Source: Magallana gigas (taxonomy: Eukaryota). Taken from it: DNA of 64,000 bases. Positions 1,888 through 28,124 of the stretch are shown here, piece by piece. The stretch spans positions 1,054,001-1,118,000 of the forward strand of contig NC_088854.1 in the NCBI RefSeq assembly GCF_963853765.1, in the 5' to 3' direction. Made by a program: the position numbers and the translations under genes. The notes under the pieces were generated by a model. It saw only the letters and a list, made by a program, of their open reading frames with translations. It did no database searches and was not told the origin of the DNA. Position 1 is the first letter of the stretch. Each line of letters opens with the position of its first letter.

Positions 1888-4800
1888 ATGTTTCAATATT
1901 TTTCATTTCTGTCATCGTTTGTTGGTAAGGTTACATTGTGCTTTTTATTCGCATTGAAATTTAATGTTACCATAGTTCTGTTATTAATCAACATTTCCTA
2001 AAGTTAACAACTTAGCAAGTTGGCAGTTGCTATTATAGTTCCTTGTACAGTGTATCAATCAAGCATAGCTAAGTTTGTACAACATGCCAATGGCCCAAAG
2101 ACACCTTCACAGTAACTTCAATACTGCTCTTTTGCTGGGAAAAATGACATAGTTTGTTGAAATTTGACGTAACGGTAATTATGTCGTTTAATCGTCTACC
2201 TATAGTATTCTGGCTATTCACTCTGGTGCCAAAATTATGTCAATTTTTTTTCTTTTCACTACATGTATATATATTCCATTGAAAACTAACATTTTTAAAG
2301 AAATGTTAATAGGTAGCCCCTTGACTAGTTTTGAAAAGACCTGGAATTTAAATTTTATCTAGGTGTTTTTTTTGGTGGCATCATATTTGAACTATTTTTC
2401 CAACCTTCTGTAAGCTATATAGTGTTCATGAGATTTCATATTTATAATTAAATAACATCAATCCAAAGTAAGATATTTGGCTCATGTATCACAAATGATA
2501 TAAAGTAGAACTCTTTAAAAATATCTTGGTGTTAATTGTGTTTGAAATATCAAGATATCAATTTTCCCAGTAAATAATGTTTTCAATCTTGTTTCTCATG
2601 AGTCTTTTAAATGTAAAGAAAATTGATAAAGCTGCTGTATGTGTTTCGGTTTCCCTACCATGAAAGAGTCACAATATTCTTGTTCTTATGATTTTGAAAA
2701 TGTATGTTTATGGAGAACATTTTTTGGGTATTTCCATTTTAATATGTGACAATCAGACTGGTTTGAATACCAGTGCCAGATAGCTTATGTGGTAGAGCAC
2801 CTGACTAGAGGTTTAGGGGGCACATGTTCGGATCCTGGTCAAGTATGTCATTATTTTTCCCCTCCCCGATACATTTGGTGCTCTGACCAACCCCTGGAAT
2901 GTGGAACTGACAGGAAAACTTCTTTCAAGGGAAAGAGCCTGGAGTAATCTTCAAGGGCAAAGATATTAATTTAAGAGGTAGGGGGAGATGTGATGATCAG
3001 ACCAGTTTAAATACCAGCGCTAGATATTTCAGTTGGTAGAACACCTGTCTAGAGATTCAGGAGGCCAGTGTTCAAATCTCAGTCTAGTCTGTCTTTATTT
3101 CTTCCATCCTGTTGCATTTAGTACCATACCCTTCCCTGGAACTTACAGGTTAACCCCTAATGCCAGGGGAAAGAGCCTTTAATACCAGGAGTGATCTTTG
3201 CGGACAAAGATCATTTTTAAAAGGGGGAGGAATGTGACGGTCAGATCGCTTCTGAGTCACATGCCGGCGCCAGAGAGCTCAGTTTGTAAAGCACCTGACT
3301 AGAAATTCAGGTGGTCCATGTTCAAATCTCAGTCTGGTCTGTCATTTTTTCTTCCTTACCGTTACAGTAATATTTAAATCATATAATTTGGTCTTTCTAT
3401 GCCTGCAATCCATATTTTTTTTTTTTATAAAAGATAATCATGTTTAAGATTTCTTTAGTGGAAATACATTAAGAGAAAATAAAATCTTGGTTCTATAAAA
3501 ATTAAAAGAAGCATAACAGCCATTATTTGTATAATAATATCATCTTTAATGCTAATTTAAAAATTAAAGATTTAATTTTTTTAACCCAGCCAGCTCAGTT
3601 TTTGAATGTACCAGTTGTATATGATGATATCAGTAAGATATTTATATCAAGAGCTACAGTGTAATGCAATTATAAAGTTCTTGAAAGTGTTTTCCACATA
3701 AACATTTTGTAACATATGTAGAGTATAACCTACCTATACATTTATAGTGTTACTTTTAAACAAACTACCGTAATAGAGAATAGTCTAATTAAAAGAAACA
3801 TATTTCTCAAAATAGACTCCTGTCCTCACACTGCATGTTAAATATTGAATCTGGGAGGTACCGTGCAGGAAAATAGCAAGCAAGATAGATTAATCTTAAG
3901 ATGCTTGTGACACCCAGTGTTTTATTTTATTCTCCAGTGCCCACATCATACAAATTCGATAAGAAAAAAAATTCATAATCGAGTTGTATTATCAATAATG
4001 CCAAGTTGTTGGGTTCACAACATATATCTACCTTGGTTGGTCTCAGTAAATTTAATCATTTTGCTCTTTTTTATGTAACAATAAAATATTACATTGATTT
4101 GATTTAAATTTTATTTTAATTTTTTTATCTACTTTTCAAATGGAGGACACATTTCTCTTCATTCTCCAGTGCCCACATTATACAAATTTAATAAGGAAAA
4201 AATACATAAGGGAGTAAGTTATTTTCTATCGCCATGTTCATTTTAATTTGGTTCAGAACATGCATCTTCCTACCACAGTTGGTTGCATCTCATGAAATGT
4301 ACATTACATTGATTCCAGGTTCATATATTATTGCAATTTATTTGATTTATTTTACTGTATGTCTGTATATTCTACAATAGTACTTCTTCAACAAACACTG
4401 TTTTACAACTATGTGATTGAACAAACAATATGACAAATTGTATGTTAATTAAAAGTTAAAATAGTTACTGTTCAGTATCTGTTACACATGTTATATACAC
4501 AAGGATTGAACTGTTGAATACAGTGAATGCATAAATTGAAGTGATTATTCAGTATGTGATGCTTTTTATATAATAGATACATTCTGTTGACTACACCTAT
4601 ATTTAGTTGTAAATACTCTTGAAATTATTTGCAACTGATTTATTCAGGATATATTAATCATGAAGTGATACTTCACAATATAAAACACATGCAGAAGCGA
4701 ATGTTCTGAAAGATCAGAATATGTTCTTTAATGTTTAATACTGTGGAATCATTAGATTTCGTGGTGGCTCAATTTTCGTGGAATTTGTGGGTACCTCTCA

Positions 4801-5078
4801 TCCACGAATTAACATCCTCCACGAATTATATATTAGGGTTAAAAAGTCATATTTCATTTTGTAGGTATAAGAAAATACACAAAATTACGTCCCCACGAAC
4901 CTATAAAATTTCAGCAATCCACGAAAATTGACCCCCACCAAATTTGATGATTCCACAGTAACAGATACAAGCTAGAATTTTATGTTGAACTATATTATGG
5001 TATATAGATAAATTAGCAAGACATTAATTTGGACAATAATTTGGGTTAATTTTATTAATTTACTCTGAGCAAATACTG

Positions 5079-5116
<38 letters not shown>

Positions 5117-8100
5117 AAATTTAGTTCAATTTTTTTATTGTATTATACTCCATATACATGTATATGTAAGATCAGTCATCAACAGCAATATAACAGACAG
5201 TCTGCCAATATCATGGTCAGTGTACAAGCCTTAAAGATAATTAGTAGCAAGTATGAATAATTAAAAACTCCCAGAACAGTTCTGGTGGTTGTATAGTGAT
5301 GAGATTATCTGTAATTATTTGTTTAATGAAATTTACTGGAATTGTGGTAAACACAGCTCTGATAGAGATCTGAGAGAATATGACAGATGTGAGTACAAAT
5401 AGTCTACAGATGCAGAAAACACCCATAAACTTCAGATATCACACATGCAACTATTTTATTTTTAGCTGACAAAGGACACATTATCCTATTGATTTCCTGA
5501 ATGTGTGAACAAAGAACTCAGATCTAATAAGATATTGCATGTAGAGGGTGGTAGTTCTATTCCCAGTCTCTGTCAAACAAGAGAGTCATGATGGGCCAGC
5601 TAGTCTTTGTTATACATCGTGTGCATAATTGATGAATTAACAGTCACACACCTCATAGACTCTGAGTATGAAGGTAACCTCTGCCCTGAAGTGATGATAA
5701 TTGAGCCCATTGGTCTGTGAAGGTGCTGCATTTTTTATGATGTAAAACAATAAAAACTATTGGTGTCAGAAATTCATTTTGCATCACTGGCTCCAAGCCT
5801 AATGTGTTAGATTTTTACCAGTAACATTAATTATATAGATCTCAAGTTATAGGGAGATGAATATTGTTGATTGATGAGCATGCATGTACATACATGTATT
5901 ACATTTTAAAAAATATTATTTGGAGCAAATCAAACTCCATAACCCCCTCCCTCCCAGTCCCATCCCCTCTCCAACAACTTGCTGACCCTAAAATTAACAG
6001 GAGCCATATAGTATCGTTTCAAACCAAACTTTGTTCCATTGATCCAGTTAAAATACATGCATATATATAATTTGCATGGTTATTGTCACAGGATTCTAAT
6101 AACCTCAACTTAAACAGACTTGATAAAGCTTTGTTCTCTGGATAAAATCTAAAAACCCCTGTCAATGAGATGCTGCTTTTACTAATCAGCCCAATGTGAT
6201 CAATAACTAGACAATGCTTTGTCTTTACAGTATCGGCGGGTCTGTTGACACTCCAGGGCCCAGACAATCGCACGGCAGTGCTACACCGTGGAGCTAATCT
6301 GAGCTGTAATATTCTGAAGGATGGCAAGGCTCTCGCCAGTCTCCACGAGGTGGAGGAGCCGTACAGACTCACCTGGAGCTTTACAGGTAATTAGCATTAA
6401 TAGGCTCATTACAGGTGTGTAGTACTAGCTGAATGAGTGGCCGCTAATCAATAGATTTTATAAATAACAAAGTGTATAGTCAGTCTGTTCGTGCAACATA
6501 ATTAAATGTCATTCATTAGTTTTTATATTTTATTCTATTATTTATGCCTTACAGTCCTTAAATTACAAGATCAATATTCATAAACAGAAAAGAAAGTAAA
6601 CAATTTCATAGAAGCCGAATTCTAGCATAAACTAAAACTATTTTTTCATAGCTTCTTCTTTGCAAGAGTGTATATAAATATATTTCAGTGAATATTTAAT
6701 GAATAATGGAGTGAGAGAGGATAATGATATAAAGATATAGCTTTGTAAAGACTTCAGAAATTCCTCCATTGTCCTCTGCGACTGTCAATATACCGATGTA
6801 CCTAACAATTGTATGGACTTCTTGCTGTCTTTATAGATCTTGGTTTTTGCAAGTATTGATATCAGAATTTCTTATTGAGTTGAAACTTGTTAGATATATA
6901 AAAAATAGAAATGCATTGTCAATAATCTTTTGTTGAATCCAGGCAACTGAATTATTTTTCTTTTAAAAATGGTTTAATAGATAAAAAAAATATATTAGGT
7001 ACATAAGGAAAAATTGCGATTTAAACCAACAACCTTTATTTCATTTATATGCCAGTAGTACCTTTTTTCCATGTATAGTTCACAATAAATTGAACATCAT
7101 AGAGGGATGAGTAATTTTTAATCGGGTAAACATTTAAAGCACTGTGTTTTTAATTACAGGGGTAGGGGACACGAAGCCTACGCCAATCCATGAGGTATAC
7201 AGCAATGGATTTGCTCTACCGCAGGCCTCCATTAAATACAACAACTCTCACTACAGCAGTGACTTTGACACGACGCTCTACATCTCTAACATCTCCTTCT
7301 CTGATGCTGGCACCTACTCCTGTTCTATAAGGACGGACAGTAAATCTTTTGAGCTGTACGTCATTGGTAAGGAACAGACATCCCAGACTTTAGATTATCC
7401 TATTACACCTTTAGTATTTTTGGGCCACCTTACACACTCAGTCATTGTGATTGCTATTGGTCGTTGACCATTGTTGATCTTATATTGTTTGATGCCTGTT
7501 TTTGGTGAACAATTTTACATTTCTAGATCCATTTAAAAACTGAAGATTTTTTGTCAAAATCTCTGGTATGTATTAAAGCTTCTTTGTAATATGAAGGCCT
7601 GGAGCCTCATAGGTGTGGTCAAAACTTCACCCGCACTGAAACATAAAAAATTCATAACCCAGCTCTTTAATTAATTATGTGTAAGTATTTGAAATAACCT
7701 ATGCTTCATGAAATGATGTAATTTTACAGAGGAGCCTCACTGTCATAACTACAACAGCAGTGTCCAGGTCAGTCAGCAGGCCTTCTTCGACTGTGATGTG
7801 AGTTTCCATGGTAACAATCCTCCAGAAATAAGCTGGAAGCATGACAATAAAGATTTAAACTATTCCTTGGTATATAAAAACAAAACATATACCTTAGCTC
7901 GTTTGTCATTGGTTGCTTCCGAGGAGGATGATGGGAATGTTTATATTTGTCAAGTGACTTTCCCGTCAGTTCACGGCTTTATCTGCCAGACTCTACCCAA
8001 GCTGAAAGTTTATTGTAAGTATAATATCCAATGTATGTAGGTTTTAATGTTTCTTTCTATATAACCCTGTAATTTATATTCTTTTATTTTAAAAAAAGTT

Positions 8101-11100
8101 CTATAAATGTAGGATGAACTGGATTTGGATTTATTCTGAATTTGACAAAATGAACACGATAAATAGTTCATTCGTTCCTCAGTTTTGATCATGTCATCAA
8201 CCCTAACTATATTCTTTTGAATATTTTGAAAAACTTTTTCTTGGTAGTTCCGGTGAAAGAAACGGACATAATCGTGAGTCCCTATCAGGTTGTGTACGAG
8301 GAGGGGACCAGCATCAACCTTCGGTGTGTGGCCAAAGGGGAGCCCCACCCCCATTACTTCTGGACCTTTACCCCCCTTTCTGACCCCCTCAAGGTCTCCA
8401 ACCTGACCACTCACCCAGCTTACAAGATCATCAACGTCAAGAAATCAAACATAGGGAACTATACGTGTAGTGTTCGCAATGAAATAAACCGGACGGTCTA
8501 TACAGACGCTAAGATTGTTTTCCTCAACATCACTGGTGAGTGTCGCTGTAGGTGCATGGGCAGGTCAATAAACTTAATGATCTCTGTGCAAATATGTAAG
8601 GACTCAATAGCATAACTCTTTGTCTCTAAAAATAAATAAATTAGGTTGCTGTTAGCCCTAACCTAATGGCAAAATATTTGAATTTTATATCCTAGATAGA
8701 AAATAATTTTACAAATCTACTGTACATGAAAATTATCAATAAAGATAATCATGAACTAGACTTTATTTATATAGAAACCCCCTATCTTTTTCTATATTTA
8801 CACAGAAAAAGAAGTGTCATCTGTAAAACCTGGATACAGATTGATGGCGGAGTCCACGACAACAGCCGCTGAGCAGACCCACAGTGGGGATGTTAACAGT
8901 GTGTATCCTCTAGTCACTCTGTACCATTTACAGAATCAGCTCACATTTCTCATGTGATCCTTATGATTTTGTTGAAGGTTCCATATTTACCTTACATTTT
9001 GAAGGGTTTACCTGCTAAATTTATCAATTTTTTCTCTTTGACTTTCCTTCTCTCTCCTCAAGTTCATAGAAAGTGAATTAGAGCTAGATTTCCATATTCT
9101 TTGTTATTTTACCCATACTTGGAGTCTTACATTGTGAATGCTGTATTGTACCCTATTTGTAGTTGTAGACAGTATTTTACTTTCATTAATGCTGTATGTT
9201 TTCATAAAATTGATTTTTAACTGTAGAATATAATATGAATGCTGTATTTGACCTCCATTTGGAATTACATAGTGTTTTATTGTTTCTTTATATTAATGCT
9301 GTGTATGACTTTGGTCTCAAGTAGTACATTGTTATATCAATGCTGTTTGTTGACCTAAATCTCTTTGAAGTTGTGTAGTGTTTGATTGTTGCTTTTAATT
9401 ACTGTTTTATTTGAGGCCAGTATGTTGACATTCTCTGTTTCAGTGTGTGCCTATGCAGTGGGTGTTTATTACTGTTGTATTGAGGCCTGTATGTTGACAT
9501 TCTCTGTTTCAGTGTCTGCCTATGCAGTGGGGGCTGTTGTGAGTGCAGTGCTGGCAATATTTCTGATTGTTGTCTTCATCTTGTTAGCCATCAAATTCAG
9601 GGTATGCTCCTTCATCAAATCATTTCAACTTTACAAACTTTACACATTGAAATAAAATATGGCAAACTACTCAGATAAAACATGAAGTTTTTAATTACAA
9701 AGATTCACATTTTTGTCGATATAATTCTATTAGCATTAGGTAAGTTCACTTAACAATAAACTTCAGCATTAGGTAAGCTCACAGGGCATGCTAAAATGTC
9801 ATTATGTTCAAGATTAATGTATCAAAGAAATGAAGACTTCTTTGCATGTGAAACATGAACTCAACAACGAAGCATAAAAGGGTTGTTTACAAATATTAAG
9901 TTTTAAATATAACATGTACATGTGTTCATTTTATAAAAATCAAACAGCCAATCATTGAATAACACCGTAATCATTGTGTGAAATGACAAGAATATTAGCA
10001 TGTCTGAATAAGCCAGTTGGATGATGGTATGTTGTAATCAGATATAAGGTTTTGTGTTATACCCTTACATTAACTTTATGTGTAATGATCTGACCATGTT
10101 CTATCATTACCTTAATCTGATGATTACCAGGTAGGCTAAATTCTTCCATTTACATGCATAAAATTCTGTGTTATAATCAGACCAGATCTACCATATATTA
10201 ACATAAATACGTTCACTTAATTAATTATATGTATATGTAAAGATCAGGCTGAACTCTATTTTACATTAATACATTAATTAACTGTATAATTATGTTATGA
10301 TCAGGGGAGAGAGCGGCGCTACAGAGAAAGGATGGCCCTGGTACAGGATGATTTCACTGACGATCAGGAGCAGGAACTGTTGGACGAGGATATCCCCAGT
10401 CCTAATGATGTCAACATGGAGGTGAGAGTCAGTACAGGTGTAATCAAAACAGGTGTAATCAGTACAGGTATAATCAGGACAGGTATAATCAGTACAGGTA
10501 TAATCAGGACAGGTATAATCAGTACAGGTGTAATCAGTACAGGTGTAATCAGTACAGGTGTAATCAGTACAGGTGTAATCAGTACAGGTGTAATCAGTAC
10601 AGGTGTAATCAGTACAGGTGTAATCAGTAAAGGTGTAATCAGGACAGGTGTAATCAGGACAGGTATAATCAGGACAGGTATAATCAGTACAGGTATAATC
10701 AGGACAGGTATAATCAGTACAGGTGTAATCAGTACAGGTGTAATCAGTAAAGGTGTAATCAGTACAGGTGTAATCAGTACAGGTGTAATCAGGACAGGTG
10801 TAATCAGTACAGGTATAATCAGTACAGGTATAATCAGGACAGGTATAATCAGGACAGGTATAATCAGTACAGGTATAATCAGGACAGGTATAATCAGTAT
10901 AATCAGTACAGGTATAATCAGGACAGGTATAATCAGTACAGGTATAATCAGTACAGGTATAATCAGTACAGGTATAATCAGTACAGGTGTAATCAGGACA
11001 GGTGTAATCAGTACAGGTGTAATCAGTACAGGTATAATCAGGACAGGTATAATCAGTACATGTATAATCCTATTGATGTCAACGTGGAAGTGATAGAATA

Positions 11101-14100
11101 GGTGTAATCAGTACAGGTGTAATCAGTGCAGGTGTAATCAAAACAGGTGTAATCAGAACAGGTGTAATCTTTGTGATTTCACCATGGAAGTGATAGAACA
11201 GCTGTAATCAGTGCAGTTGTAATTATAACAGGTGTAATCAAAACAGGTGTAATCCTAGTGATGTCAACATAGATATGATAGAACAGGTGTAATCAATAGA
11301 GGTGTAATCAGTACAGGTGTAATCAAAACAGGTGTTATCCTTGCGATTTCACCATGGAAGTGATAGAACAGCTGTACTCAGTACAGGTGTAATCAAAACA
11401 GGTGTGATCAGTACAGCCTTATGACTAAATTTATTAAATGCCATTTATAAACTAATCAGTGTTTCAATGCTGATTATGTGTTGATGCTAGTAAAATATTA
11501 CCTGGTAAATTATACAAATAGAAAAAAGATGTGAATAAATTGTTTTATATAAATTCTGTTCATTAAAGATCATACCATGTGACTGACTATATATAAGTCT
11601 TTGTTGTAAGTTCTTTTGTAAAACGCACCCCAGGTAATCAGAATGTTAGAGATGGAACTGGTGTAAGTATAGAGTAAATGCAGGTAGAAGAACAGGTAAT
11701 CAGGAGGTCAGAGCAAGCAGAATAGGCTGTGCATAGTATAAATACAAGTCATATAAAAGATTCTGTGAATGAAACAATAATGATGAAATCAGTGCACCTG
11801 CTAGATGCAACACTAATTTATTAGAATGATAGCATTGATGTTCAATGTGTTATAGGTACCGGGTCAGTACAGTAGACTAGGCGAGTACTGGGAGATCCGT
11901 ATGCGAGATGTGGTACTAATTATAGGAACTAATGACATTGATGTCCATTGTGTTTTAGATACAGGGCCAGTACAGGAGACTAGGGGAGTACTGGGAGATC
12001 CCCAAGAGAGACGTACGGCTGATGGACCTGATAGCGACCGGCTCGTACTGTGAGGTGTGGAGGGGACGGATGAGAAAACACTCGGACAGCACCGATGTCC
12101 TAAGAGTGGCCATCAAGAAAATGCTAGGTACCATCTCTGGGAAGCTAGTGGCTATATCAGTCCTTTCATGTCCACAACTTTTATTAGGAAAAATATCAGT
12201 TAGAGGTTCATTCTTGGCATAAAAGTTGCTTTTGACATGAGTGTCAATGTCACAGCATCATCATCAGTATGGAATTTATCTAAAACAGGCCTTTTTGGAT
12301 GAATGGAGGTGTTAATAGTCATATGTGGACACTTTATGTTAAATTTATTTCTGTTTTAAAGTACATTAAGTTATCACTTGAATGGTACAGTAATTATACA
12401 TTTGTCTGAATTGATGGTACATGTACTTGGAGGCTTAAGTCAAAAAGATATATTCTTCCTTTTTGTTCTTTTCTTTTACTTCAATTACTATAGAAGGCGT
12501 TGTTTATAAATCTTTCATCAGGGATATGATGTGAGTAAATTATCTATATGTAACAATGTCTGAGTATAAAAGATTCTATAGCATAACAGTTACAGTATCT
12601 TATGATGTAAAAGTCTGTTAAACTTTGTTGTATCAGATGATGCCTCAGCTGTGGGAAGAAAGTACTTCTTAGCAGAAATGGAGGTGATGAAGTCATTGAA
12701 GGCCCATAGTAATGTCATCACCCTCATCGGCTGTTACACTCTCACAGGTAATGTCATCATCCTCACCCTAATGTCATCACCCTCATTGGCTGTTACACTC
12801 TCGCAGGTAATGTCATCACACTCACAGGTAATGTCATCAACTGACAGGTAATGTCATCACCCTCAAAGGTAATGTCATCACCCTCACAGGTAATGTCATC
12901 CCTCTCATTGGCTGTTAGACTCTCACAGGTAATGACATCACCCTCATCAGCTGTTAGACTCTCACAGGTAATGTCATCACCCTCATAGTAATTTCATCAT
13001 CTTAAGGTAATGTCATCACCTTAACCGTAATCCCAGCACCCTCATCAGCTGTTACACACTCACAGGTAATGTCATCACCCTCACTGTAATGTCATCACAC
13101 TCACAGGTAATGTCATCCCCCTCATTGGCTGTTACACTCTCACAGGTAATGTCATCCCCCTCATTGGCTGTTACACTCTCACAGGTAATGTCATCACACT
13201 CATTGGCTGTTAGACTCTCACAGGTAATGTCATCACCCTCATAGGCTCCAACACTCCCACAGGTAATGTGATCACCCTCATAGTAATTTCATCATCCTAA
13301 GGTAATGTCATCACCCTAACTGTAGTGCCATCACCTCATCAGCTGTTACACACTTGGTATACAAATTTATCATAAGTCAAGTTCGATTTTAGGTACAATT
13401 GAGCAGGTTTGGACAGAGTTATGCCCGTTGGACTTAAAAAAATTCAAATTATTTGCAGTTTCCACTCATTTTTTTTTCATGGATGTTTCCAAGGGAGGGG
13501 GGCATAAGTGTTTTACAAACATCTCTTGTTTTTTTAGAGATTTTTCATTCATAACTTTTCACATGCAAGTTGGTTTTCACCACAATAACCTGCTTACAGA
13601 GCCCTGGATGCTGATGTTAGAGTACGCCCATGAGGGGACCTTACAGCGGTACCTCCAGAAACACAGCCCCGGGGCTCAGCACGTGGAGATACAGTCCCAG
13701 GAGTCAGTGCGACTCAAGAACAGCAAAATAGACGCCAAGAAGCTGCTCTCTATGGCCACCCAGGTCATCAACGGCCTGCTACACCTCACTAAGTACAAGG
13801 TGGGATCTGTAATAACCCTGCAGTGTTTGTATCTACTTGCAATAGCAAAATAGATATTTTAGGGTTAAAATCAATGATTTTTTTTATTGAAGAAATTAAT
13901 AATGCCATAATCATGAAATTATATCATGATTATAATTATTATTGTATTTATGGATGTGTACAAGACAATTTAAAATTTGTAAACATTTGCATTTCTTTTA
14001 CATGTGTTGCTGTAATGTTAACTTTAAGTTATGAATGGTAACATTTTATGCAACAGCTGATATACTACCGCTTGTCGGCATCGAGTATTCTGGTTGCCAA

Positions 14101-15609
14101 GGGAGGGGTCTGTAAACTCTCGGGCTTTGGATTCCAGAAAGAAATCACAGAAAGAAATATTTACGAGAAGGTAATAAACGTTTTGTACGAGAGATTCAAC
14201 ACACAAACGATAATAAGAGAATCAGGACTCATTTTCTTGTTGATATGAATCATATGATAACCATCTTTTGAGGTTGAATTTGTTTGTATATGGGGCATGG
14301 ACACTGGCTGAGATGTCATTTCAAAAGTTTCATCATTTAACCTGTTTTAATTAAAAATCATAGATATCAATGATACAATTTTGTTTTGCATGTTATTTAT
14401 TTAAATAAATGTAATGCTGCACTAGTGCCCATTTTTTTAACAATATTGTTTTTGATCACCGCATTGTTAGAAAGCAACAAAATAAAAATACACAGAGCAC
14501 TGATTTATTCCTTTGTTTTAGGAATCCCTTCCTGTTAGATGTATGGCCCCAGAATCCTTATCACAAAATATCTACGACACAAGGTCTGACACATATGCTT
14601 TTGGCATCCTACTGTGGCAAATAATACATTTTGGTAAGAAATATTTGAATTTATATTTGTTATGTAAATGAATTTTATATTCTTATGCATTTCATGTATC
14701 CATACATGTATTAATGAGTTTTTAAAGTGCAATGCCTAAAAAATTATTTAGTTACTGTGTATCAGTCAGCAATATCTTGATCATCCTGCTAAATACATGT
14801 ATGTCTTGATTTAATATAATAAAGTGTGAGAAAATTGATAGACAGATAGAATGATAAAAAATCAAAGATGATTGAAGCTTTTTGACATTTACTAAAAAAA
14901 CCCAACTTTTATTCGCCTGCGAGAAATTATAGAAAGGTTTACGAGAGCCTCATTATTGCAAATATATCTCACTGCGGACCAGTATATCAAATGAAGTCAT
15001 GATTGTTATAAGTACATGGTCTATTTTTTTTAACATCACAGGGCAGGTACCTTACCCCACCATGGACATAAATGAAGTGAAAGAGAAAGTATTGAATGGA
15101 GAACGCATGCCCCAGCCCCAGCACTGTAGTCCCCAGTTGTAAGTTAATATTCTGTGTCACAAAATTAACTATAGGCATATTGATATACTGTATATAAGAA
15201 TCCATAAGGCATAGAATATTGTAAACACCCATCTCTGCGTTGATAAGGCATACATGTTTTAAAAGACATATCTGATTTGGATAAGGAAAACAATGCTGTA
15301 AACAACTGTCTCTGTATTGATAAAGCATACATAGCTTTAAAAATCAGCCTCTGTGCCGATATGGCATACAATATACTTTACGCCTATGTTAATTAGGCAT
15401 ACAGCACTGTAAACATCTATCGGTGTGTTGACAGGTTTGGGTTGATGGAGCGGTGCTGGAGTGGTGACCCTGACCAGCGGCCTCTCTACCCCGACATCCT
15501 ACAGACACTGACCACGTTACTGACCCACAGCGACACAAACATCGTACTGGATGATCTCCCCTCTCTGCATCTCTCAGAGAGTGAAGTAGACTCAGAACAT
15601 AACCTGTAG
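1888..15609 (+). CDS. Receptor tyrosine kinase-like pseudokinase: signal peptide, 3 Ig domains, TM, degenerate TK domain (FGFR-like architecture), ~749 aa
   Basis: Phase-consistent GT/AG exons: 1888-1924, 6231-6386, 7160-7366, 7730-8014, 8248-8535, 8806-8898, 9513-9601, 10305-10421, 11959-12127, 12637-12747, 13600-13799, 14057-14170, 14522-14633, 15042-15138, 15435-15609 (2250 nt). Features: signal MFQYFSFLSSFVVSAG; Ig C-W-YxC patterns (LSC/LTW/YSC, FDC/ISW/YIC, LRC/YFW/YTC); TM AVGAVVSAVLAIFLIVVFILLAI; WEIP, VAIK, EMEVM, PVRCMAPES, SDTYAFGILLW, CWxxDPDQRP. Confidence 0.9.
2745..3365 (+). repeat. Three tandem ~245-bp units each containing a tRNA-like (pseudo-tRNA/SINE head) sequence
   Basis: Copies begin at ~2775, ~3019 and ~3269. 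Each has an A-box-like TAGCTCAGTTGGTAGAGCA, a stem CCTGA-ctagaga-TTCAGG and a B-box-like GTTC(G/A)(G/A)ATC; the T-stem pairs poorly. Confidence 0.65.
3910..4290 (+). repeat. Degenerate intronic tandem duplication (~230-bp unit)
   Basis: ttctccagtgcccacat(c/t)atacaaatt...aa occurs at ~3930 and ~4162. Confidence 0.6.
4741..4958. mobile_element. Tc1/mariner-type MITE
   Basis: ~24-bp TIR CTGTGGAATCAT...ATGATTCCACAG flanked by TA on both sides. Confidence 0.8.
5084..5114. repeat. (GA)n microsatellite
   Basis: Direct reading. Confidence 0.95.
10431..11415 (+). repeat. 15-bp minisatellite (AGTACAGGTGTAATC / AGGACAGGTATAATC), ~42 core units plus a degenerate tail containing copies of the upstream exon end
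   Basis: Core runs 10431-11060. The exon-end sequence cctaatgatgtcaacatgga reappears diverged at ~11069 and ~11254. Confidence 0.95.
12709..13352 (+). repeat. ~39-bp minisatellite derived from the 3' end and donor of kinase exon 12637-12747
   Basis: Unit GTAATGTCATCACCCTCATTGGCTGTTACACTCTCACAG, with truncated variants; the first unit is the coding NVITLIGCYTLT. Confidence 0.9.
13345..13533 (-). mobile_element. Short Helentron/HINE-like fragment in intron
   Basis: Terminus reads AAACAAGAGATGTTTGTAAAACACTTATGCCCC on minus, the same AAACAAGAG start as the other Helentrons here. Confidence 0.45.
15170..15434 (+). repeat. Degenerate ~39-bp intronic repeat ending at the last acceptor of the receptor gene
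   Basis: Recurring aaggcatac...tgtaaaca...tctgt...gat units. Confidence 0.6.
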
Positions 15610-18277
15610 CCATGTCAAATCTTTGACCACAATCTGCAGCCATGTCAAACCCTGAAACATAACCTGCAGCCCCATCAAACCTTCAATCATAGCCTATAGT
15701 AATGTGCAGCTACATTGGGGAATGAAAACTATAACTACATTTAATCTTCGAATATAATCTATGGCATTAACTATAAGACATGCAGCAGAACTAAAAAGAA
15801 GGAGTGTTTTTATGCAGAAGCTTGCTTGCATTGTATATTCTGCTTTGAATATTTCTCTCAACATTTGTTGATTAACAAAACTTTGTGAAAAAAAAACAAA
15901 AAATGACTTTTAAAGGCATTGGTTATCTTGATATAATGGTCATATACATTTTTGTCATGTATATTTTGTAAATTTGCAAGCTATGTGTAAGAATTTTATT
16001 AATATAGTTTCTTACTTTTAACCCTGAACAACACAAAGACATCAATGTGTAGGGAATTTTCTTTATATAAGATCTCACTGTTACTTATTCATATTTTCCC
16101 GTCCACTATAAGAGTGATTGAAAAAAACTTCTGCTATATTTTTTATTCACTTTTTTAATCTATATACAAATATTGATATTTCACATATTTGATAACCCAT
16201 TAGATATTTTGGGACAATGAGTAAATAGAAGTTATGTGTGTCTATTTACATACTTAGTAGGTAACAAGTTTCTGTGTGCGTTTATGATGTGTCTGTTTTG
16301 AAATTTTAGATACTAAAATTCAAAATCTTTATCTTTTATTACAATATACATACAAGTTGATTAATATTTTTTGCTTGAAAGTCAGGGTTAGGGTAAGCAC
16401 TTTTTACTTAGCTTTTTTACTTAGGGCTGTGAATTTGTTGTACAAGATAAGAATTAAGTTTGTAAAAATCACGTGGAATATTACAATTAAACAATCTTAA
16501 ATGGAAAGGGAAGGTTTAGGTTAAAACCAAGGATGAGAAATATACACAAATATTTTCCCACATGTACTAGTTCAAACTGTGCATACAATAAAATCTTTAT
16601 GTAGTGTATTGATATAGACACTCAGTGATGTAACAAGACTTAGCTTCTTTGTTATGTTTTATTATCAGTAACTAAATGATTACTATATTAACATGATAGA
16701 TTATATTTTCAATCTTATTATACATTATAACTAAGGTTGATTGAAATTTTAATGTATACATGTATTACTAGGATGTTTACTTGTAAAGGTTGCATAGATT
16801 GTTCTTATGCTTCACAGGTTTGTTATTCGCTTTTTTTAAAAGTTATACCAAACCGATTACACCAATGCAGTTCTGCTCAAAATAAGGGTATATTATACTG
16901 TTGTTTTCTATGAGTTACTGGTGAATATATGGTAGGTTGCAGGGATCATGACACAAATCTACAATTTTGTTGCCCACAGGGTGATTTTTACAACAACATT
17001 TTGTCATATTTTTTTAAAAATTATTTTAGATTGATATGGAATTGTTTAACCTCTATTTAGTCAGTTAGATATTTTGCTACGACTTTAATTTATAAGTAAC
17101 TGTTATCTTTGTATGGCCGTGTTTTGTTGTAGTATATTTGTTATATGATGAAATAGTGCTTCACATATTTCACTAAACTTTTTCATGTCTATCTGTCCTT
17201 TTTTTGGTGCTTGATTTGTTGAACGTATATATTGGTTGTTTATAATTTTTTTCATGCTTATCTTTTATTTATACGAAGTGCAATGAAGTAAATAATAAAA
17301 AAAAAAATAAGCAGATGAATGGTAAATTATTATATTATTATAAGCATACTTTAATTATGATGAAAAACCATGCTGGACCAAATAATAATTATTTGCCGTT
17401 TAAACATATTTCTAGAGCTCTTTTTAGAAATTAGGACTAGACTATTCTCTTGACGTTTGTTTTAGAAATTGTCTCTGTTAAGTATGTAATATTTGACTTG
17501 GCCCACTGACAGACATGCCCTTGTTTTACAAATTCACTTGTTTTCCTCTCTTTTCTGTAAAGTAATATTTCTTTTGATGATGAATAATTGATAAGTGCTA
17601 TAAGTCTTCCTTTTAAAAAGTCATGTGCTGTCAAAAGAAGAAATATTCCTTAAGATACTTCACTTTCCCTGACCATTGTAATACCGTTTATACGTGTTTG
17701 TCACCGCTCAATTGGGTATCTTTACGTCTATGACAAAGGTCTGTATAATTGAATTGATCACGTCGAAACCGAAATTATTACCACATAATATTCATTGATG
17801 CCTAATTACATATATTTATATAATTTTCAGCAATTGTACGATTTAATATTTGAATATAAATAAGCAAACCCCGCTTGCGCCCTAATTGTACGTCATTTGA
17901 AATTTATTTGACTGTATAGTACAAAATCGATATGTAGTATTATCACAGGCAAAGATATTATAAAATGTAAATATTTCTAGGTGAGTGCCAATGCCTTGTC
18001 ATGCTACCTCCTATATTTTAAAATGTCCGTACTGAAAAGTCAGCTGTACTCTCGAATTTATACTTTTAGCAATCATCAGCTCTTTTAAGGGTATTAAATC
18101 TAAACGTTTTAAATACATGTAGAATTTCCACTTCAAAACTTCATAACATATTCAGAAATTTTAGAGACCACCAAATATTCTTTTAGAATGTAATCATTGA
18201 GCAGACGATATCATAAGATAAAAGAAGATGGGCGAATAAGGCGTATAAAAACCTAAATGAGGATATATATAAGATAC

Positions 18278-27929: not shown

Positions 27930-28124
27930 NNNNNNNNNNNNNNNNNNNNNNNNNNNNNNNNNNNNNNNNNNNNNNNNNNNNNNNNNNNNNNNNNNNNNNN
28001 NNNNNNNNNNNNNNNNNNNNNNNNNNNNNNNNNNNNNNNNNNNNNNNNNNNNNNNNNNNNNNNNNNNNNNNNNNNNNNNNNNNNNNNNNNNNNNNNNNNN
28101 NNNNNNNNNNNNNNNNNNNNNNNN
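27930..28124. other. Assembly gap (195 N)
   Basis: Direct reading. Confidence 1.

What the first reader, a model, noticed from the sequence alone, without database searches (positions are those of the whole stretch)
11959..14633. FGFR-architecture receptor whose kinase is catalytically dead (pseudokinase)
Seen: Gly-loop LIATGSYCEV (canonical LGxGxFGxV); catalytic loop IYYRLSASSILV (canonical IHRDLAARNILV; base Asp->Arg, Asn->Ser); KLSGFG (DFG->GFG); PVRCMAPE (Trp->Cys). VAIK Lys and the alphaC Glu are retained, and the whole 749-aa frame, 3 Ig domains and all splice sites are intact. Established: receptor pseudokinases (PTK7, ROR, RYK, ERBB3, EphA10/B6) act as co-receptors/scaffolds, but I know of none with a 3-Ig ectodomain and this motif set. 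Inference: a lineage-specific decoy or co-receptor maintained by selection.
Basis: partly seen in the sequence, partly recalled or inferred. Interest (0 to 1): 0.7.

Follow-up and report, generated by a model that had tools for sequence, protein, structure and literature searches.

The report
Mollusc-wide three-Ig receptor with dead kinase
This Pacific oyster gene, labelled "FGF receptor 3" in databases, encodes an expressed cell-surface receptor whose kinase has lost its catalytic residues, and the same dead version has been kept under strong selection in bivalves, snails and octopus, so it is a real, apparently undescribed non-catalytic signalling receptor family.

Summary
On the + strand a 15-exon gene (CDS 1888-15609, 749 codons) encodes a signal peptide, three Ig domains, a transmembrane helix, a juxtamembrane segment and a complete tyrosine-kinase fold in seven exons. 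The kinase reads ATGSYC (Gly loop), YYR for HRD, and GFG for DFG. The beta3 Lys and alphaC Glu are kept.

RNA contigs from three studies, plus raw reads, show exactly the predicted splice joints around the dead catalytic-loop exon. No alternative HRD/DFG exon exists.

It is not an oyster singleton. Thirty-five proteins from bivalves, gastropods and octopus share the same dead motifs and form one clade (100/100). Against Saccostrea, synonymous sites are saturated (pS 0.84) and kinase pN is 0.095.

The transmembrane helix, juxtamembrane segment and pseudokinase are more conserved than the Ig domains, which argues against a pure decoy.

The kinase fold is nearest FGFR/RET. The genome has a separate canonical FGFR, the ectodomain is not FGFR-like, and there is no acid box. 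It is therefore a new receptor pseudokinase family, not an FGFR.

I found no paper describing it. Its function is inferred: a non-catalytic co-receptor or scaffold. The same scan reported another oyster receptor pseudokinase (Tie-like) elsewhere in this genome.

The parts
1888..1924 (+). Exon 1 coding part: start codon and short hydrophobic N-terminus (signal peptide), ends in phase 1
   Evidence: Sequence; matches the first 12 residues of transcript-derived P0030
6231..6386 (+). Ig domain 1, first half (phase 1-1 exon)
   Evidence: splice sites AG/GT read directly
7160..7366 (+). Ig domain 1, second half (V-set-like, DAGTYSC)
   Evidence: Pfam V-set/Ig_3/ig, E 3e-5 to 1e-4
7730..8014 (+). Ig domain 2 (I-set)
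   Evidence: Pfam I-set, E 2.3e-8
8248..8535 (+). Ig domain 3 (Ig_3/I-set)
   Evidence: Pfam Ig_3, E 2.7e-12
8806..8898 (+). Extracellular stalk exon (least conserved part of the protein)
   Evidence: family majority fraction 0.22
9513..9601 (+). Transmembrane exon with conserved Y-A-[VI]-G-A-x-x-[STC]-A small-xxx-small motif
   Evidence: majority fraction 0.72 and 11 of 30 columns at 90% or more across 24 molluscs
10305..10421 (+). Juxtamembrane exon; near-invariant acidic di-leucine-like motif DDQE-x-ELLD at 10359-10391
11959..12127 (+). Kinase exon 1: conserved Y-x-x-L Tyr (11971-11973), degenerate Gly loop (12028-12057), retained beta3 Lys (12115-12117)
   Evidence: against Saccostrea, 1 nonsynonymous versus 28 synonymous differences
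12637..12747 (+). Kinase exon 2: alphaC helix with retained Glu (12675-12677)
   Evidence: The joint to the next exon is seen as a loose end at 13596 carrying this exon's own 3' end
13600..13799 (+). Kinase exon 3: hinge (EYA), short kinase insert, alphaE
   Evidence: Pfam, E 1.1e-5; RNA contigs and the joint 13799>14057
14057..14170 (+). Kinase exon 4: dead catalytic loop IYYRLSASSILV (14060-14095; Arg at the catalytic Asp position, 14069-14071), GFG for DFG (14123-14131), conserved activation-loop Tyr (14162-14164)
   Evidence: Spliced on both sides in contigs of 3 studies and in raw reads. No close second copy in the genome
14522..14633 (+). Kinase exon 5: PVRCMAPE (14531-14554) to alphaF
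   Evidence: Pfam, E 4.7e-9; joints 14170>14522 and 14633>15042
15042..15138 (+). Kinase exon 6
15435..15609 (+). Kinase exon 7, C-terminal tail with conserved [IL]-x-[LIMF]-[DE]-x-[LI]-P motif, stop at 15607-15609

Best explanation
The gene is the Pacific oyster member (NCBI XP_011439274, auto-named 'FGF receptor 3') of a single-copy receptor family found throughout molluscs. The protein has a signal peptide, three Ig domains, a stalk, one transmembrane helix, an acidic juxtamembrane segment and an FGFR/RET-like kinase fold.

In the family's ancestor the fold lost the catalytic Asp (now Arg) and the Mg-binding Asp of DFG (now Gly). The catalytic-loop Asn is lost in oysters and most members, though a few keep it. 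The beta3 Lys-alphaC Glu pair was kept. Shown here: the gene is intact, spliced as modelled, transcribed, and under strong purifying selection that is strongest on the transmembrane, juxtamembrane and pseudokinase parts.

Inferred: it does not phosphorylate substrates. It signals as a non-catalytic co-receptor or scaffold. The fast-evolving Ig ectodomain would bind a ligand or a counter-receptor. The conserved small-xxx-small transmembrane helix and the pseudokinase would pair it with an active partner kinase. Two near-invariant tyrosines would then be phosphorylated in trans to recruit effectors or direct trafficking: Y-x-x-L just before the kinase domain, and E-R-N-x-Y-E in the shortened activation loop. 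The acidic DDQE-x-ELLD motif may contribute in the same way.

Whether it still binds nucleotide is open. If it does, binding should be metal-independent.
For: Gene model and motifs.

Transcription and splicing:
- Joints 13799>14057, 14170>14522, 14633>15042 and 15138>15435 are seen in contigs of three studies. Raw poly(A) reads also show the first two (2 reads and 1 read).
- Exon depth is 10-50 times intron depth.
- 127 transcript-derived protein calls of 749/732 aa come from 2.4-4.6 kb contigs.
- No HRD- or DFG-like coding potential lies anywhere in 10422-15700, and there is no close second copy of the catalytic-loop exon in the genome.

Family:
- 35 mollusc proteins carry Y-[YF]-R-L, G-F-G, the retained Lys and Glu, the E-R-N-x-Y-E Tyr and DDQE-x-ELLD.
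- The clade has 100/100 support, sits on a long stem (1.13 substitutions per site), and gastropods are monophyletic within it.
- Scores drop from 388 bits or more within the family to 180 bits outside it.

Selection:
- Against the Saccostrea locus, the kinase has pS 0.836 (saturated), pN 0.095 and 84% aa identity. The ectodomain has pN 0.163 and 71% identity.
- Of 5 coding differences between the RNA and the window, 4 are synonymous.
- Across the family, conservation is TM 0.72, kinase lobes 0.68-0.72, JM 0.63, Ig 0.39-0.46.

Fold: the AlphaFold2 model has pLDDT 86 and pTM 0.84. Its nearest structures are FGFR1-4 and RET, with TM-score 0.72-0.89.
Against: - No biochemical test of activity or nucleotide binding is possible here. 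Some 'dead' kinases (CASK, JAK2 JH2) have turned out weakly active (PMC4718504).
- Partner, ligand and tissue of expression are unknown. The phosphotyrosine, transmembrane-pairing and sorting-motif roles rest on conservation only.
- Many gastropod members replace the Ala of VAIK with Ile or Val, so nucleotide binding may not be a shared property of the family.
- RNA evidence was laid only on 13450-15750. Three of the four runs are contigs, and two of those are only guessed to be RNA.
- The tree has few RTK families and no mollusc FGFR, RET or VEGFR, so the family's origin is unresolved.
Confidence: 0.78

Rival explanations
1. It is a kinase-dead paralogue of the FGF receptor in the functional sense. 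It binds FGF ligands through its three Ig domains and modulates the canonical FGFR by heterodimerising with it.
For: The kinase domain scores best against FGFR1/2/4 among all solved structures (166 bits, nearly gapless including the short kinase insert). Foldseek ranks FGFR first and RET next. The layout of 3 Ig + TM + kinase is the same as FGFR's. NCBI auto-names several members FGFR-like.
Against: - The ectodomain matches MDGA1, Robo, titin, DSCAM and contactin (49-57 bits). FGFR2 appears only at 23.6 bits, at the bottom of the list.
- There is no acid box between Ig1 and Ig2.
- The tree leaves FGFR, PDGFR and this family unresolved.
- The window gene is not among 78 genome hits at E<=1e-6 for an arthropod FGFR kinase domain, whereas a canonical FGFR at G000:C8:23.60 Mb matches at 60-68% per exon.
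- A scallop study found one true Fgfr and set aside four Ig+kinase genes as mollusc-specific (PMC11814522).
Confidence: 0.12
2. It is a pure ligand sink or decoy, like FGFRL1 or other decoy receptors. The intracellular domain would have no signalling role.
For: Catalytic residues are lost. The juxtamembrane part has Y-x-x-L and acidic di-leucine-like motifs that could drive constitutive endocytosis.
Against: The cytoplasmic pseudokinase and the transmembrane helix are more conserved than the ligand-binding Ig domains. The exon holding the degenerate Gly loop and the Lys is 98% identical between oyster genera although synonymous sites are saturated. A decoy would not need to keep a 300-residue fold intact across bivalves, gastropods and cephalopods.
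Confidence: 0.06
3. It is an atypical but active kinase that catalyses phosphotransfer with non-canonical residues, for example metal-independently as CASK does.
For: The beta3 Lys, the alphaC Glu and the EYA hinge are retained in bivalves and octopus. The N-lobe exon is extremely constrained. Precedents are reviewed in PMC4718504.
Against: The catalytic base is Arg and both metal ligands are gone in oysters. The third Gly of the Gly loop is Cys, Val or Thr. Many gastropods put Ile or Val at the adenine-contacting Ala. No human receptor pseudokinase with both HRD-Asp and DFG-Asp missing is listed as active (Table 2 of PMC13259870).
Confidence: 0.05
4. It is a decaying pseudogene, or an annotation or assembly artefact.
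For: Introns hold odd tandem copies of exon ends and splice sites. There is a partial pseudo-exon at 11856-11921.
Against: The reading frame is open across 15 exons. The splice joints are used in RNA. There are 127 transcript-derived calls. Orthologues exist in three mollusc classes with the same motifs. pN/pS is 0.11 against saturated pS.
Confidence: 0.01

Closest known systems
PTK7 / CCK4 / Off-track (Ig-ectodomain receptor pseudokinase, Wnt/PCP co-receptor)
   Same: Single-pass receptor with an all-Ig ectodomain and a conserved, catalytically dead tyrosine-kinase fold. It works as a co-receptor or adhesion scaffold (PMC13259870). This is the best functional analogy.
   Different: PTK7 has seven Ig domains and keeps HKD....N with ALG for DFG. 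Here there are three Ig domains, with YYR and GFG. The kinase domain is nearest FGFR/RET, and no PTK7 chain is among the best 60 sequence or 50 fold matches. A scallop study names a separate PTK7 candidate. Not an orthologue.
FGF receptors (FGFR1-4, heartless/breathless, EGL-15)
   Same: 3 Ig + TM + kinase with a short insert. Closest solved kinase domains by sequence (166 bits) and fold (TM-score up to 0.89). The EYA hinge is the same.
   Different: About 30-34% kinase identity. Catalytic residues are lost. The activation loop is 4 residues shorter, with one Tyr instead of YY. There is no acid box. The ectodomain is not FGFR-like. A separate canonical FGFR exists in the same genome. The tree does not nest the family in FGFR.
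HER3/ERBB3
   Same: Receptor pseudokinase that signals by pairing with an active relative and being phosphorylated in trans. This is the proposed working model here.
   Different: HER3 keeps DFG and HRN, binds ATP and has an EGFR-type ectodomain. No partner is known for the mollusc protein.
EphA10 (HRG / GFG) and MLKL (HGK) / STRADalpha
   Same: EphA10 is the only human receptor pseudokinase with GFG for DFG. Human MLKL has a basic residue (Lys) at the catalytic Asp position. MLKL and STRADalpha bind ATP only without cations (PMC4718504). That is the most this motif set would allow.
   Different: Unrelated families and domain layouts. EphA10 has also lost the beta3 Lys, which is kept here.
FGFRL1 / nou-darake type decoys
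   Same: Three Ig domains, one TM helix, no kinase activity.
   Different: FGFRL1 has no kinase fold at all (my own knowledge). Here a full, highly constrained pseudokinase is the most conserved part.
C. elegans KIN-16 family pair OLD-1 / FLOR-1
   Same: A lineage-restricted receptor tyrosine kinase family in which a pseudokinase member pairs with an active one to signal (abstract of PMC10523662).
   Different: Nematode-specific and not shown to be related. Offered only as a precedent for a clade-specific receptor pseudokinase.

Membership tests
Receptor tyrosine pseudokinase (the kind) | Type I membrane protein with an ectodomain, a single TM helix and a complete protein-kinase fold | tested here: met
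   Pfam tiling 2-258 of PF07714 plus three Ig domains. TM exon at 9513-9601. AF2 kinase fold with pLDDT 86. FGFR/RET are the top fold matches.
Receptor tyrosine pseudokinase (the kind) | At least one of the beta3 Lys, HRD Asp or DFG Asp is missing | tested here: met
   HRD Asp is Arg and DFG Asp is Gly. The Lys is kept.
Receptor tyrosine pseudokinase (the kind) | No phosphotransferase activity | not testable with these tools
   Needs a kinase assay.
FGFR family | Kinase domain groups with FGFRs as an orthologue or in-paralogue | tested here: inconclusive
   FGFRs are the best PDB hits. The tree is unresolved between FGFR, PDGFR and this clade. The genome has its own canonical FGFR at C8:23.60 Mb.
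FGFR family | Acid box between Ig1 and Ig2, and an FGFR-type D2-D3 ligand-binding region | tested here: not met
   Ig1 joins Ig2 directly with no acidic stretch. The ectodomain's best matches are Ig adhesion molecules. FGFR2 reaches 23.6 bits, last in the list.
FGFR family | Active catalytic loop, DFG, and paired activation-loop tyrosines | tested here: not met
   YYR, GFG, and a single Tyr in a loop 4 residues shorter than in the FGFR controls.
PTK7/CCK4 | Seven Ig domains; motifs GXSXXG, VLVK, HKD....N, ALG | tested here: not met
   Three Ig domains. The motifs differ at every diagnostic position (against Table 2 of PMC13259870).
FGFRL1-type decoy | Three Ig + TM + a short tail without a kinase fold | tested here: not met
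   A full kinase fold is present.
Nork (mollusc/annelid FGFR/RET-like RTK, Hislop 2004) | No Ig domains in the ectodomain, as described in PMC5176290 | tested here: not met
   This protein has three Ig domains. Nork's description was read. No Nork sequence was compared.

The most novel reading that the evidence does not exclude
Molluscs have a phylum-wide, obligate non-catalytic signalling receptor. Its conserved transmembrane helix and dead FGFR/RET-like domain would act as an allosteric partner (HER3- or STRAD-like) for an active receptor kinase. The Arg at the catalytic-base position and the retained Lys-Glu pair would form a metal-free nucleotide- or phosphotyrosine-sensing switch. If so, this is an independently evolved signalling module with no counterpart outside the phylum.
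Probability: 0.15. Interest if true: 0.7.

Novelty: new member of a known kind. Interest (0 to 1): 0.5.

Why it matters
Receptor pseudokinases (PTK7, ROR, RYK, HER3, EphA10/B6) are central co-receptors in animal development. All the well-studied ones come from vertebrate and fly work.

This result adds a family that arose independently within the FGFR/RET-like branch. It is restricted, as far as tested, to molluscs, and it has kept a distinct dead-motif set in all three mollusc classes sampled.

It also corrects a widespread mis-annotation. Members are variously auto-named FGFR3, PDGFR-beta, VEGFR2, EGL-15 and Cad96Ca. That matters for studies that count or interpret 'FGFR' genes in oysters, scallops, snails and octopus.

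The strong constraint on the transmembrane helix, the acidic juxtamembrane motif and two tyrosines gives concrete, testable handles for finding its partners.

Tried and rejected
- **Exon-by-exon PDB searches.** The 37 and 66 aa exons hit every RTK class about equally (ROS, PDGFR, FGFR, Trk) and could not assign a family.
- **Profile word search.** The search with full-length alignment A1 was swamped by Ig-word candidates and returned only four known members plus a hemicentin.
- **Ostrea locus.** The look-up of encoding contigs had no record for the Ostrea protein, so dN/dS used Saccostrea only.
- **dN/dS ratio.** Jukes-Cantor dS is undefined because pS exceeds 0.75. I report pN, pS and pN/pS as an upper bound instead of a ratio.
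- **The 732-aa 'isoform'.** It is only a 5'-truncated call of the same protein.
- **Alternative active exon.** Rejected: no HRD- or DFG-like frame in 10422-15700, only one set of joints, and no nearby copy of exon K4.
- **Closest paralogue as a sibling receptor.** Rejected as a like-for-like sibling: the paralogue at G000:C2:24.48 Mb has several Ig exons plus two calcium-binding EGF exons and an active kinase.
- **Literature.** Searches by accession and by topic found no description of the family. The oyster kinome paper lists two 'Cad96Ca' entries as TK-Unique and does not mention pseudokinases. I could not map accession K1Q1Y4 to either.
- **Joined model.** The window was searched exon by exon by reference, and database protein P0030 stood in for the spliced product.


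Full report
**What is there**

The window is G000:C2:1054001-1118000 of a 564 Mb, 29-contig oyster genome. On the + strand I read a 15-exon gene from the sequence:
- exon 1: 1888-1924
- Ig1: 6231-6386 and 7160-7366
- Ig2: 7730-8014
- Ig3: 8248-8535
- stalk: 8806-8898
- transmembrane: 9513-9601
- juxtamembrane: 10305-10421
- kinase exons K1-K7: 11959-12127, 12637-12747, 13600-13799, 14057-14170, 14522-14633, 15042-15138, 15435-15609

All introns are GT..AG. The Ig exons are phase 1-1.

Translated one by one, the seven kinase exons match Pfam PF07714 at profile positions 2-36, 45-71, 75-120, 127-159, 165-199, 203-231 and 236-258. That is a complete, collinear tyrosine-kinase domain. The upstream exons match Ig families.

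**The motifs**

A HMMER alignment of the spliced product to the FGFR2 kinase domain is nearly gapless. It puts Y-Y-R under H-R-D, S-S under R-N, G-F-G under D-F-G and Cys under the Trp of PVKWMAPE. The beta3 Lys and the alphaC Glu are retained. Only the coordinates are too narrow, because the kinase domain runs on to 15609.

**Is it expressed, and is that exon really used?**

I laid four runs on 13450-15750: contigs of three studies, one annotated as RNA-Seq and two guessed to be RNA, plus raw poly(A) RNA reads of a fourth study.
- All three contig sets show the joints 13799>14057, 14170>14522, 14633>15042 and 15138>15435 with GT..AG ends. Raw reads show the first two (2 reads and 1 read).
- A loose end at 13596 carries the true 3' end of K2, so K2>K3 is used too.
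- Exon depth is 10-50 times intron depth.
- First mates lie on the minus strand, as expected for a + strand RNA in the usual stranded libraries.
- No other joint was reported.
- Three-frame translation of 10422-15700 has no HRD-, AARN- or DFG-like frame.
- Exon K4 has no close second copy in the genome. The next best match has E = 0.7.

The refuting scenario of 'another exon with an intact HRD/DFG' therefore fails.

A 749-aa protein (P0030) represents a cluster of 127 sequences. Nearly all of the members read are called on 2.4-4.6 kb Logan contigs. It maps to every exon after exon 1 at 97-100% within my exon limits; exon 1 matches the window by eye. The locus spans 13.7 kb, so these contigs are spliced mRNAs.

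The window was searched exon by exon by reference, and P0030 served as the spliced product.

**Identity of the gene**

The same cluster holds three named entries:
- XP_011439274.3, 'fibroblast growth factor receptor 3 [Magallana gigas]'
- an earlier name, 'platelet-derived growth factor receptor beta', also used for C. angulata
- UniProt K1Q1Y4, 'Tyrosine kinase receptor Cad96Ca'

The gene is therefore annotated, but under inconsistent automatic names and as if it were an active kinase.

**It is a family, not a singleton**

An exhaustive phmmer search with exon K3 against 1.84 billion representatives gave 28 hits. The full-length ones all carry the same dead motifs. Further searches and name look-ups gave members from three classes:
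- Bivalves: Saccostrea, Ostrea, Pinctada, Mizuhopecten, Pecten, Mytilus, Sinanodonta, Potamilus, Dreissena, Mercenaria, Mactra, Tegillarca, Solemya.
- Gastropods: Patella, Haliotis, Gigantopelta, Pomacea, Littorina, Batillaria, Babylonia, Aplysia, Elysia, Plakobranchus, Lymnaea, Biomphalaria, Bulinus, Bradybaena.
- Cephalopods: Octopus, Argonauta.

Thirty-five sequences were tabulated:
- The catalytic loop is L-[IV]-[YCFS]-[YF]-R-L (Gln for Arg only in Saccostrea).
- DFG is G-F-G (G-F-M in Saccostrea).
- The second Gly of the Gly loop is invariant. The third is Cys, Val or Thr.
- The Lys is kept in all but Gigantopelta, which has Arg.
- The alphaC Glu is kept in every sequence tabulated.
- The catalytic-loop Asn is lost in most members but kept in a few (Mytilus, Dreissena, Mactra and one unnamed bivalve-like sequence).

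In the word search with the Patella kinase domain, scores fall from 388 bits or more (all molluscs) to 180 bits (vertebrate PDGFR-alpha), with nothing in between.

A maximum-likelihood tree of kinase domains recovers the family as one clade (100/100) on a stem of 1.13 substitutions per site. Gastropods are monophyletic (98/96) and octopus lies outside the bivalve and gastropod members. This is consistent with vertical descent of one gene from an early mollusc ancestor. In the oyster genome there is one locus.

**Selection**

I paired codons exon by exon between the window and the Saccostrea echinata locus L024, and summed the counts without building a joined sequence.
- Kinase exons (317 codons): 84% aa identity, pS 0.836 (saturated), pN 0.095, pN/pS 0.11. 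This ratio is an upper bound on omega.
- Ig exons (304 codons): 71% identity, pN 0.163.
- K1, which holds the degenerate Gly loop and the Lys: 1 nonsynonymous against 28 synonymous differences.
- Of five coding differences between the RNA runs and the window, four are synonymous. The fifth is Ser/Arg in the kinase insert.

Across 24 full-length molluscs the majority-residue fraction is 0.72 for the transmembrane helix, 0.72 and 0.68 for the kinase lobes, 0.63 for the juxtamembrane part, 0.39-0.46 for the Ig domains and 0.22 for the stalk.

**What kind of kinase fold**

Among solved structures, FGFR1/2/4 fill the top of the list (about 166 bits). The only entry ranked higher is a tandem EGFR construct that scores twice.

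An AlphaFold2 model built on the family alignment is confident (pLDDT 86.2, pTM 0.84). It is disordered only at the termini and in the kinase insert, and it predicts a helix in the activation segment. Foldseek ranks FGFR1-4 first and RET next, with TM-scores of 0.72-0.89 at 28-34% identity.

**Why it is not an FGFR**

- The genome has a canonical FGFR at G000:C8:23.600-23.602 Mb, whose exons are 60-68% identical to a tick FGFR. The window gene is not among the 78 hits at E<=1e-6.
- The ectodomain's best solved matches are MDGA1, Robo, titin, DSCAM and contactins. FGFR2 appears last, at 23.6 bits.
- Ig1 runs straight into Ig2 with no acid box.
- The activation loop is four residues shorter than in the FGFR controls and has one Tyr.
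- The tree leaves FGFR, PDGFR-alpha and this clade unresolved. The clade's apparent sister is a degenerate sea-star kinase, which may be long-branch attraction.
- A scallop study found a single true Fgfr. It set aside four of eight Ig+kinase genes as probably invertebrate- or mollusc-specific (PMC11814522).
- The closest paralogue in the oyster genome (G000:C2:24.476-24.488 Mb) is an active kinase (HRDLAARN, DFG, GQGRFG) with kinase exon breaks that look the same by eye. Its ectodomain has several Ig exons plus two calcium-binding EGF exons.

**How it most likely works**

Shown: the protein is made from a correctly spliced mRNA, it lacks the residues needed for base catalysis and metal binding, and its membrane-spanning and cytoplasmic parts are under the tightest constraint.

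Inferred: it is a non-catalytic signalling receptor. The pattern of constraint argues against a mere ligand sink. Four elements are candidates for function:
- the transmembrane motif Y-A-[VI]-G-A-x-x-[STC]-A, a small-xxx-small helix-packing pattern
- the motif DDQE-x-ELLD, present in all but 2 of the 24 full-length proteins aligned
- a Tyr in a Y-x-x-[LM] context just before the kinase domain (23 of 24)
- the activation-loop E-R-N-x-Y-E Tyr (23 of 24)

Together they fit a receptor that pairs with an active kinase through its transmembrane and pseudokinase parts, is phosphorylated in trans, and recruits effectors or is sorted by its juxtamembrane signals. PTK7 and HER3 are the functional precedents (PMC13259870).

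Nucleotide binding is open.
- The Lys-Glu pair and the EYA hinge are kept in bivalves and octopus.
- With neither metal ligand left, any binding should be cation-independent, as in MLKL (Lys at the Asp position) and STRADalpha (PMC4718504).
- Many gastropods have Ile or Val at the Ala of VAIK, so nucleotide binding may not be a family-wide requirement.

**Comparison with what is known**

[quoted passage not shown] Only EphA10 has GFG, and EphA10 has also lost the Lys.

Searches of the paper library by accession and by topic found no description of this family. The oyster kinome paper classes two 'Cad96Ca' proteins as TK-Unique and never uses the word pseudokinase. One of these may be this gene; I could not verify that.

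Nork, a mollusc/annelid FGFR/RET-like receptor, is described as lacking Ig domains (PMC5176290), so it is something else.

**Earlier notes of this scan**

One note flags the exon-intron junction duplications in this same gene. I saw them as well. Another reports a different oyster receptor pseudokinase, an EGF-repeat receptor with a Tie-like kinase, on another piece of the genome. I did not test that one.

**Verdict**

The pseudokinase reading is well supported. 'Lineage-specific' should read 'mollusc-wide'. 'FGFR' should read 'FGFR/RET-like fold, not an FGFR'. 'Decoy' is less likely than 'co-receptor or scaffold'. This is a new family of a known kind, of moderate interest.

Noticed in passing
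window 9398-9531, 10429-11416, 11856-11921, 12709-13338, 15591-15695: At five places in this one gene, an exon end together with its splice site is tandemly duplicated. The TM exon's acceptor and first codons are repeated (69 bp x 1.9). A 15-bp donor-like unit follows the JM exon about 67 times. A partial copy of the K1 5' end with an acceptor sits 100 bp upstream of K1. A 39-bp unit made of the K2 3' end plus its GT donor is repeated about 9 times. A 30-bp unit lies over the stop codon. RNA uses the authentic K2 donor.
   Followed up: partly
window 13480-13532: A stretch of about 50 bp inside the K2-K3 intron has RNA word depth in the thousands in all runs. Many different flanks lie on both sides, so it is a short piece of a repeat that is abundantly transcribed elsewhere, not part of this mRNA.
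   Followed up: no
G000:C2:24476000-24488800 (L026, L006, L009): The closest paralogue in the genome is an active receptor kinase (HRDLAARN, DFG, GQGRFG) with kinase exon breaks that look the same by eye. Its ectodomain has several Ig exons and two calcium-binding EGF exons. It is a candidate active partner or sister lineage.
   Followed up: partly
G000:C8:23600036-23602182 (L020, L023): The canonical oyster FGFR. Its kinase exons are 60-68% identical to a tick FGFR.
   Followed up: partly
P0109 (Patiria miniata, 1148 aa): A sea-star protein with thrombospondin type-1 repeats and a degenerate kinase domain (HGD, no DFG) is the apparent sister of the mollusc clade (96/95). This may be long-branch attraction, or a second degenerate receptor-like kinase worth a look.
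   Followed up: no
P0002 (Saccostrea), P0091 (Gigantopelta), oyster/Mytilus members: There are lineage-specific further changes inside the dead motifs. Saccostrea has YYQ and GFM. Gigantopelta has Arg for the beta3 Lys and lacks the activation-loop Tyr. Oysters and Mytilus have Cys for the Trp of PVRWMAPE. Caenogastropods and heterobranchs have Ile or Val for the Ala of VAIK.
   Followed up: partly
database names of family members: Automatic names for one orthologous family include FGFR1, FGFR3, FGFR4, FGFR homolog 1, PDGFR-beta, VEGFR2, EGL-15 and Cad96Ca. Counts of 'FGFR' or 'VEGFR' genes in mollusc genomes that rely on such names will be inflated.
   Followed up: partly
window 27930-28124: The only run of N in the window (195 bases). 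It was left untouched.
   Followed up: no
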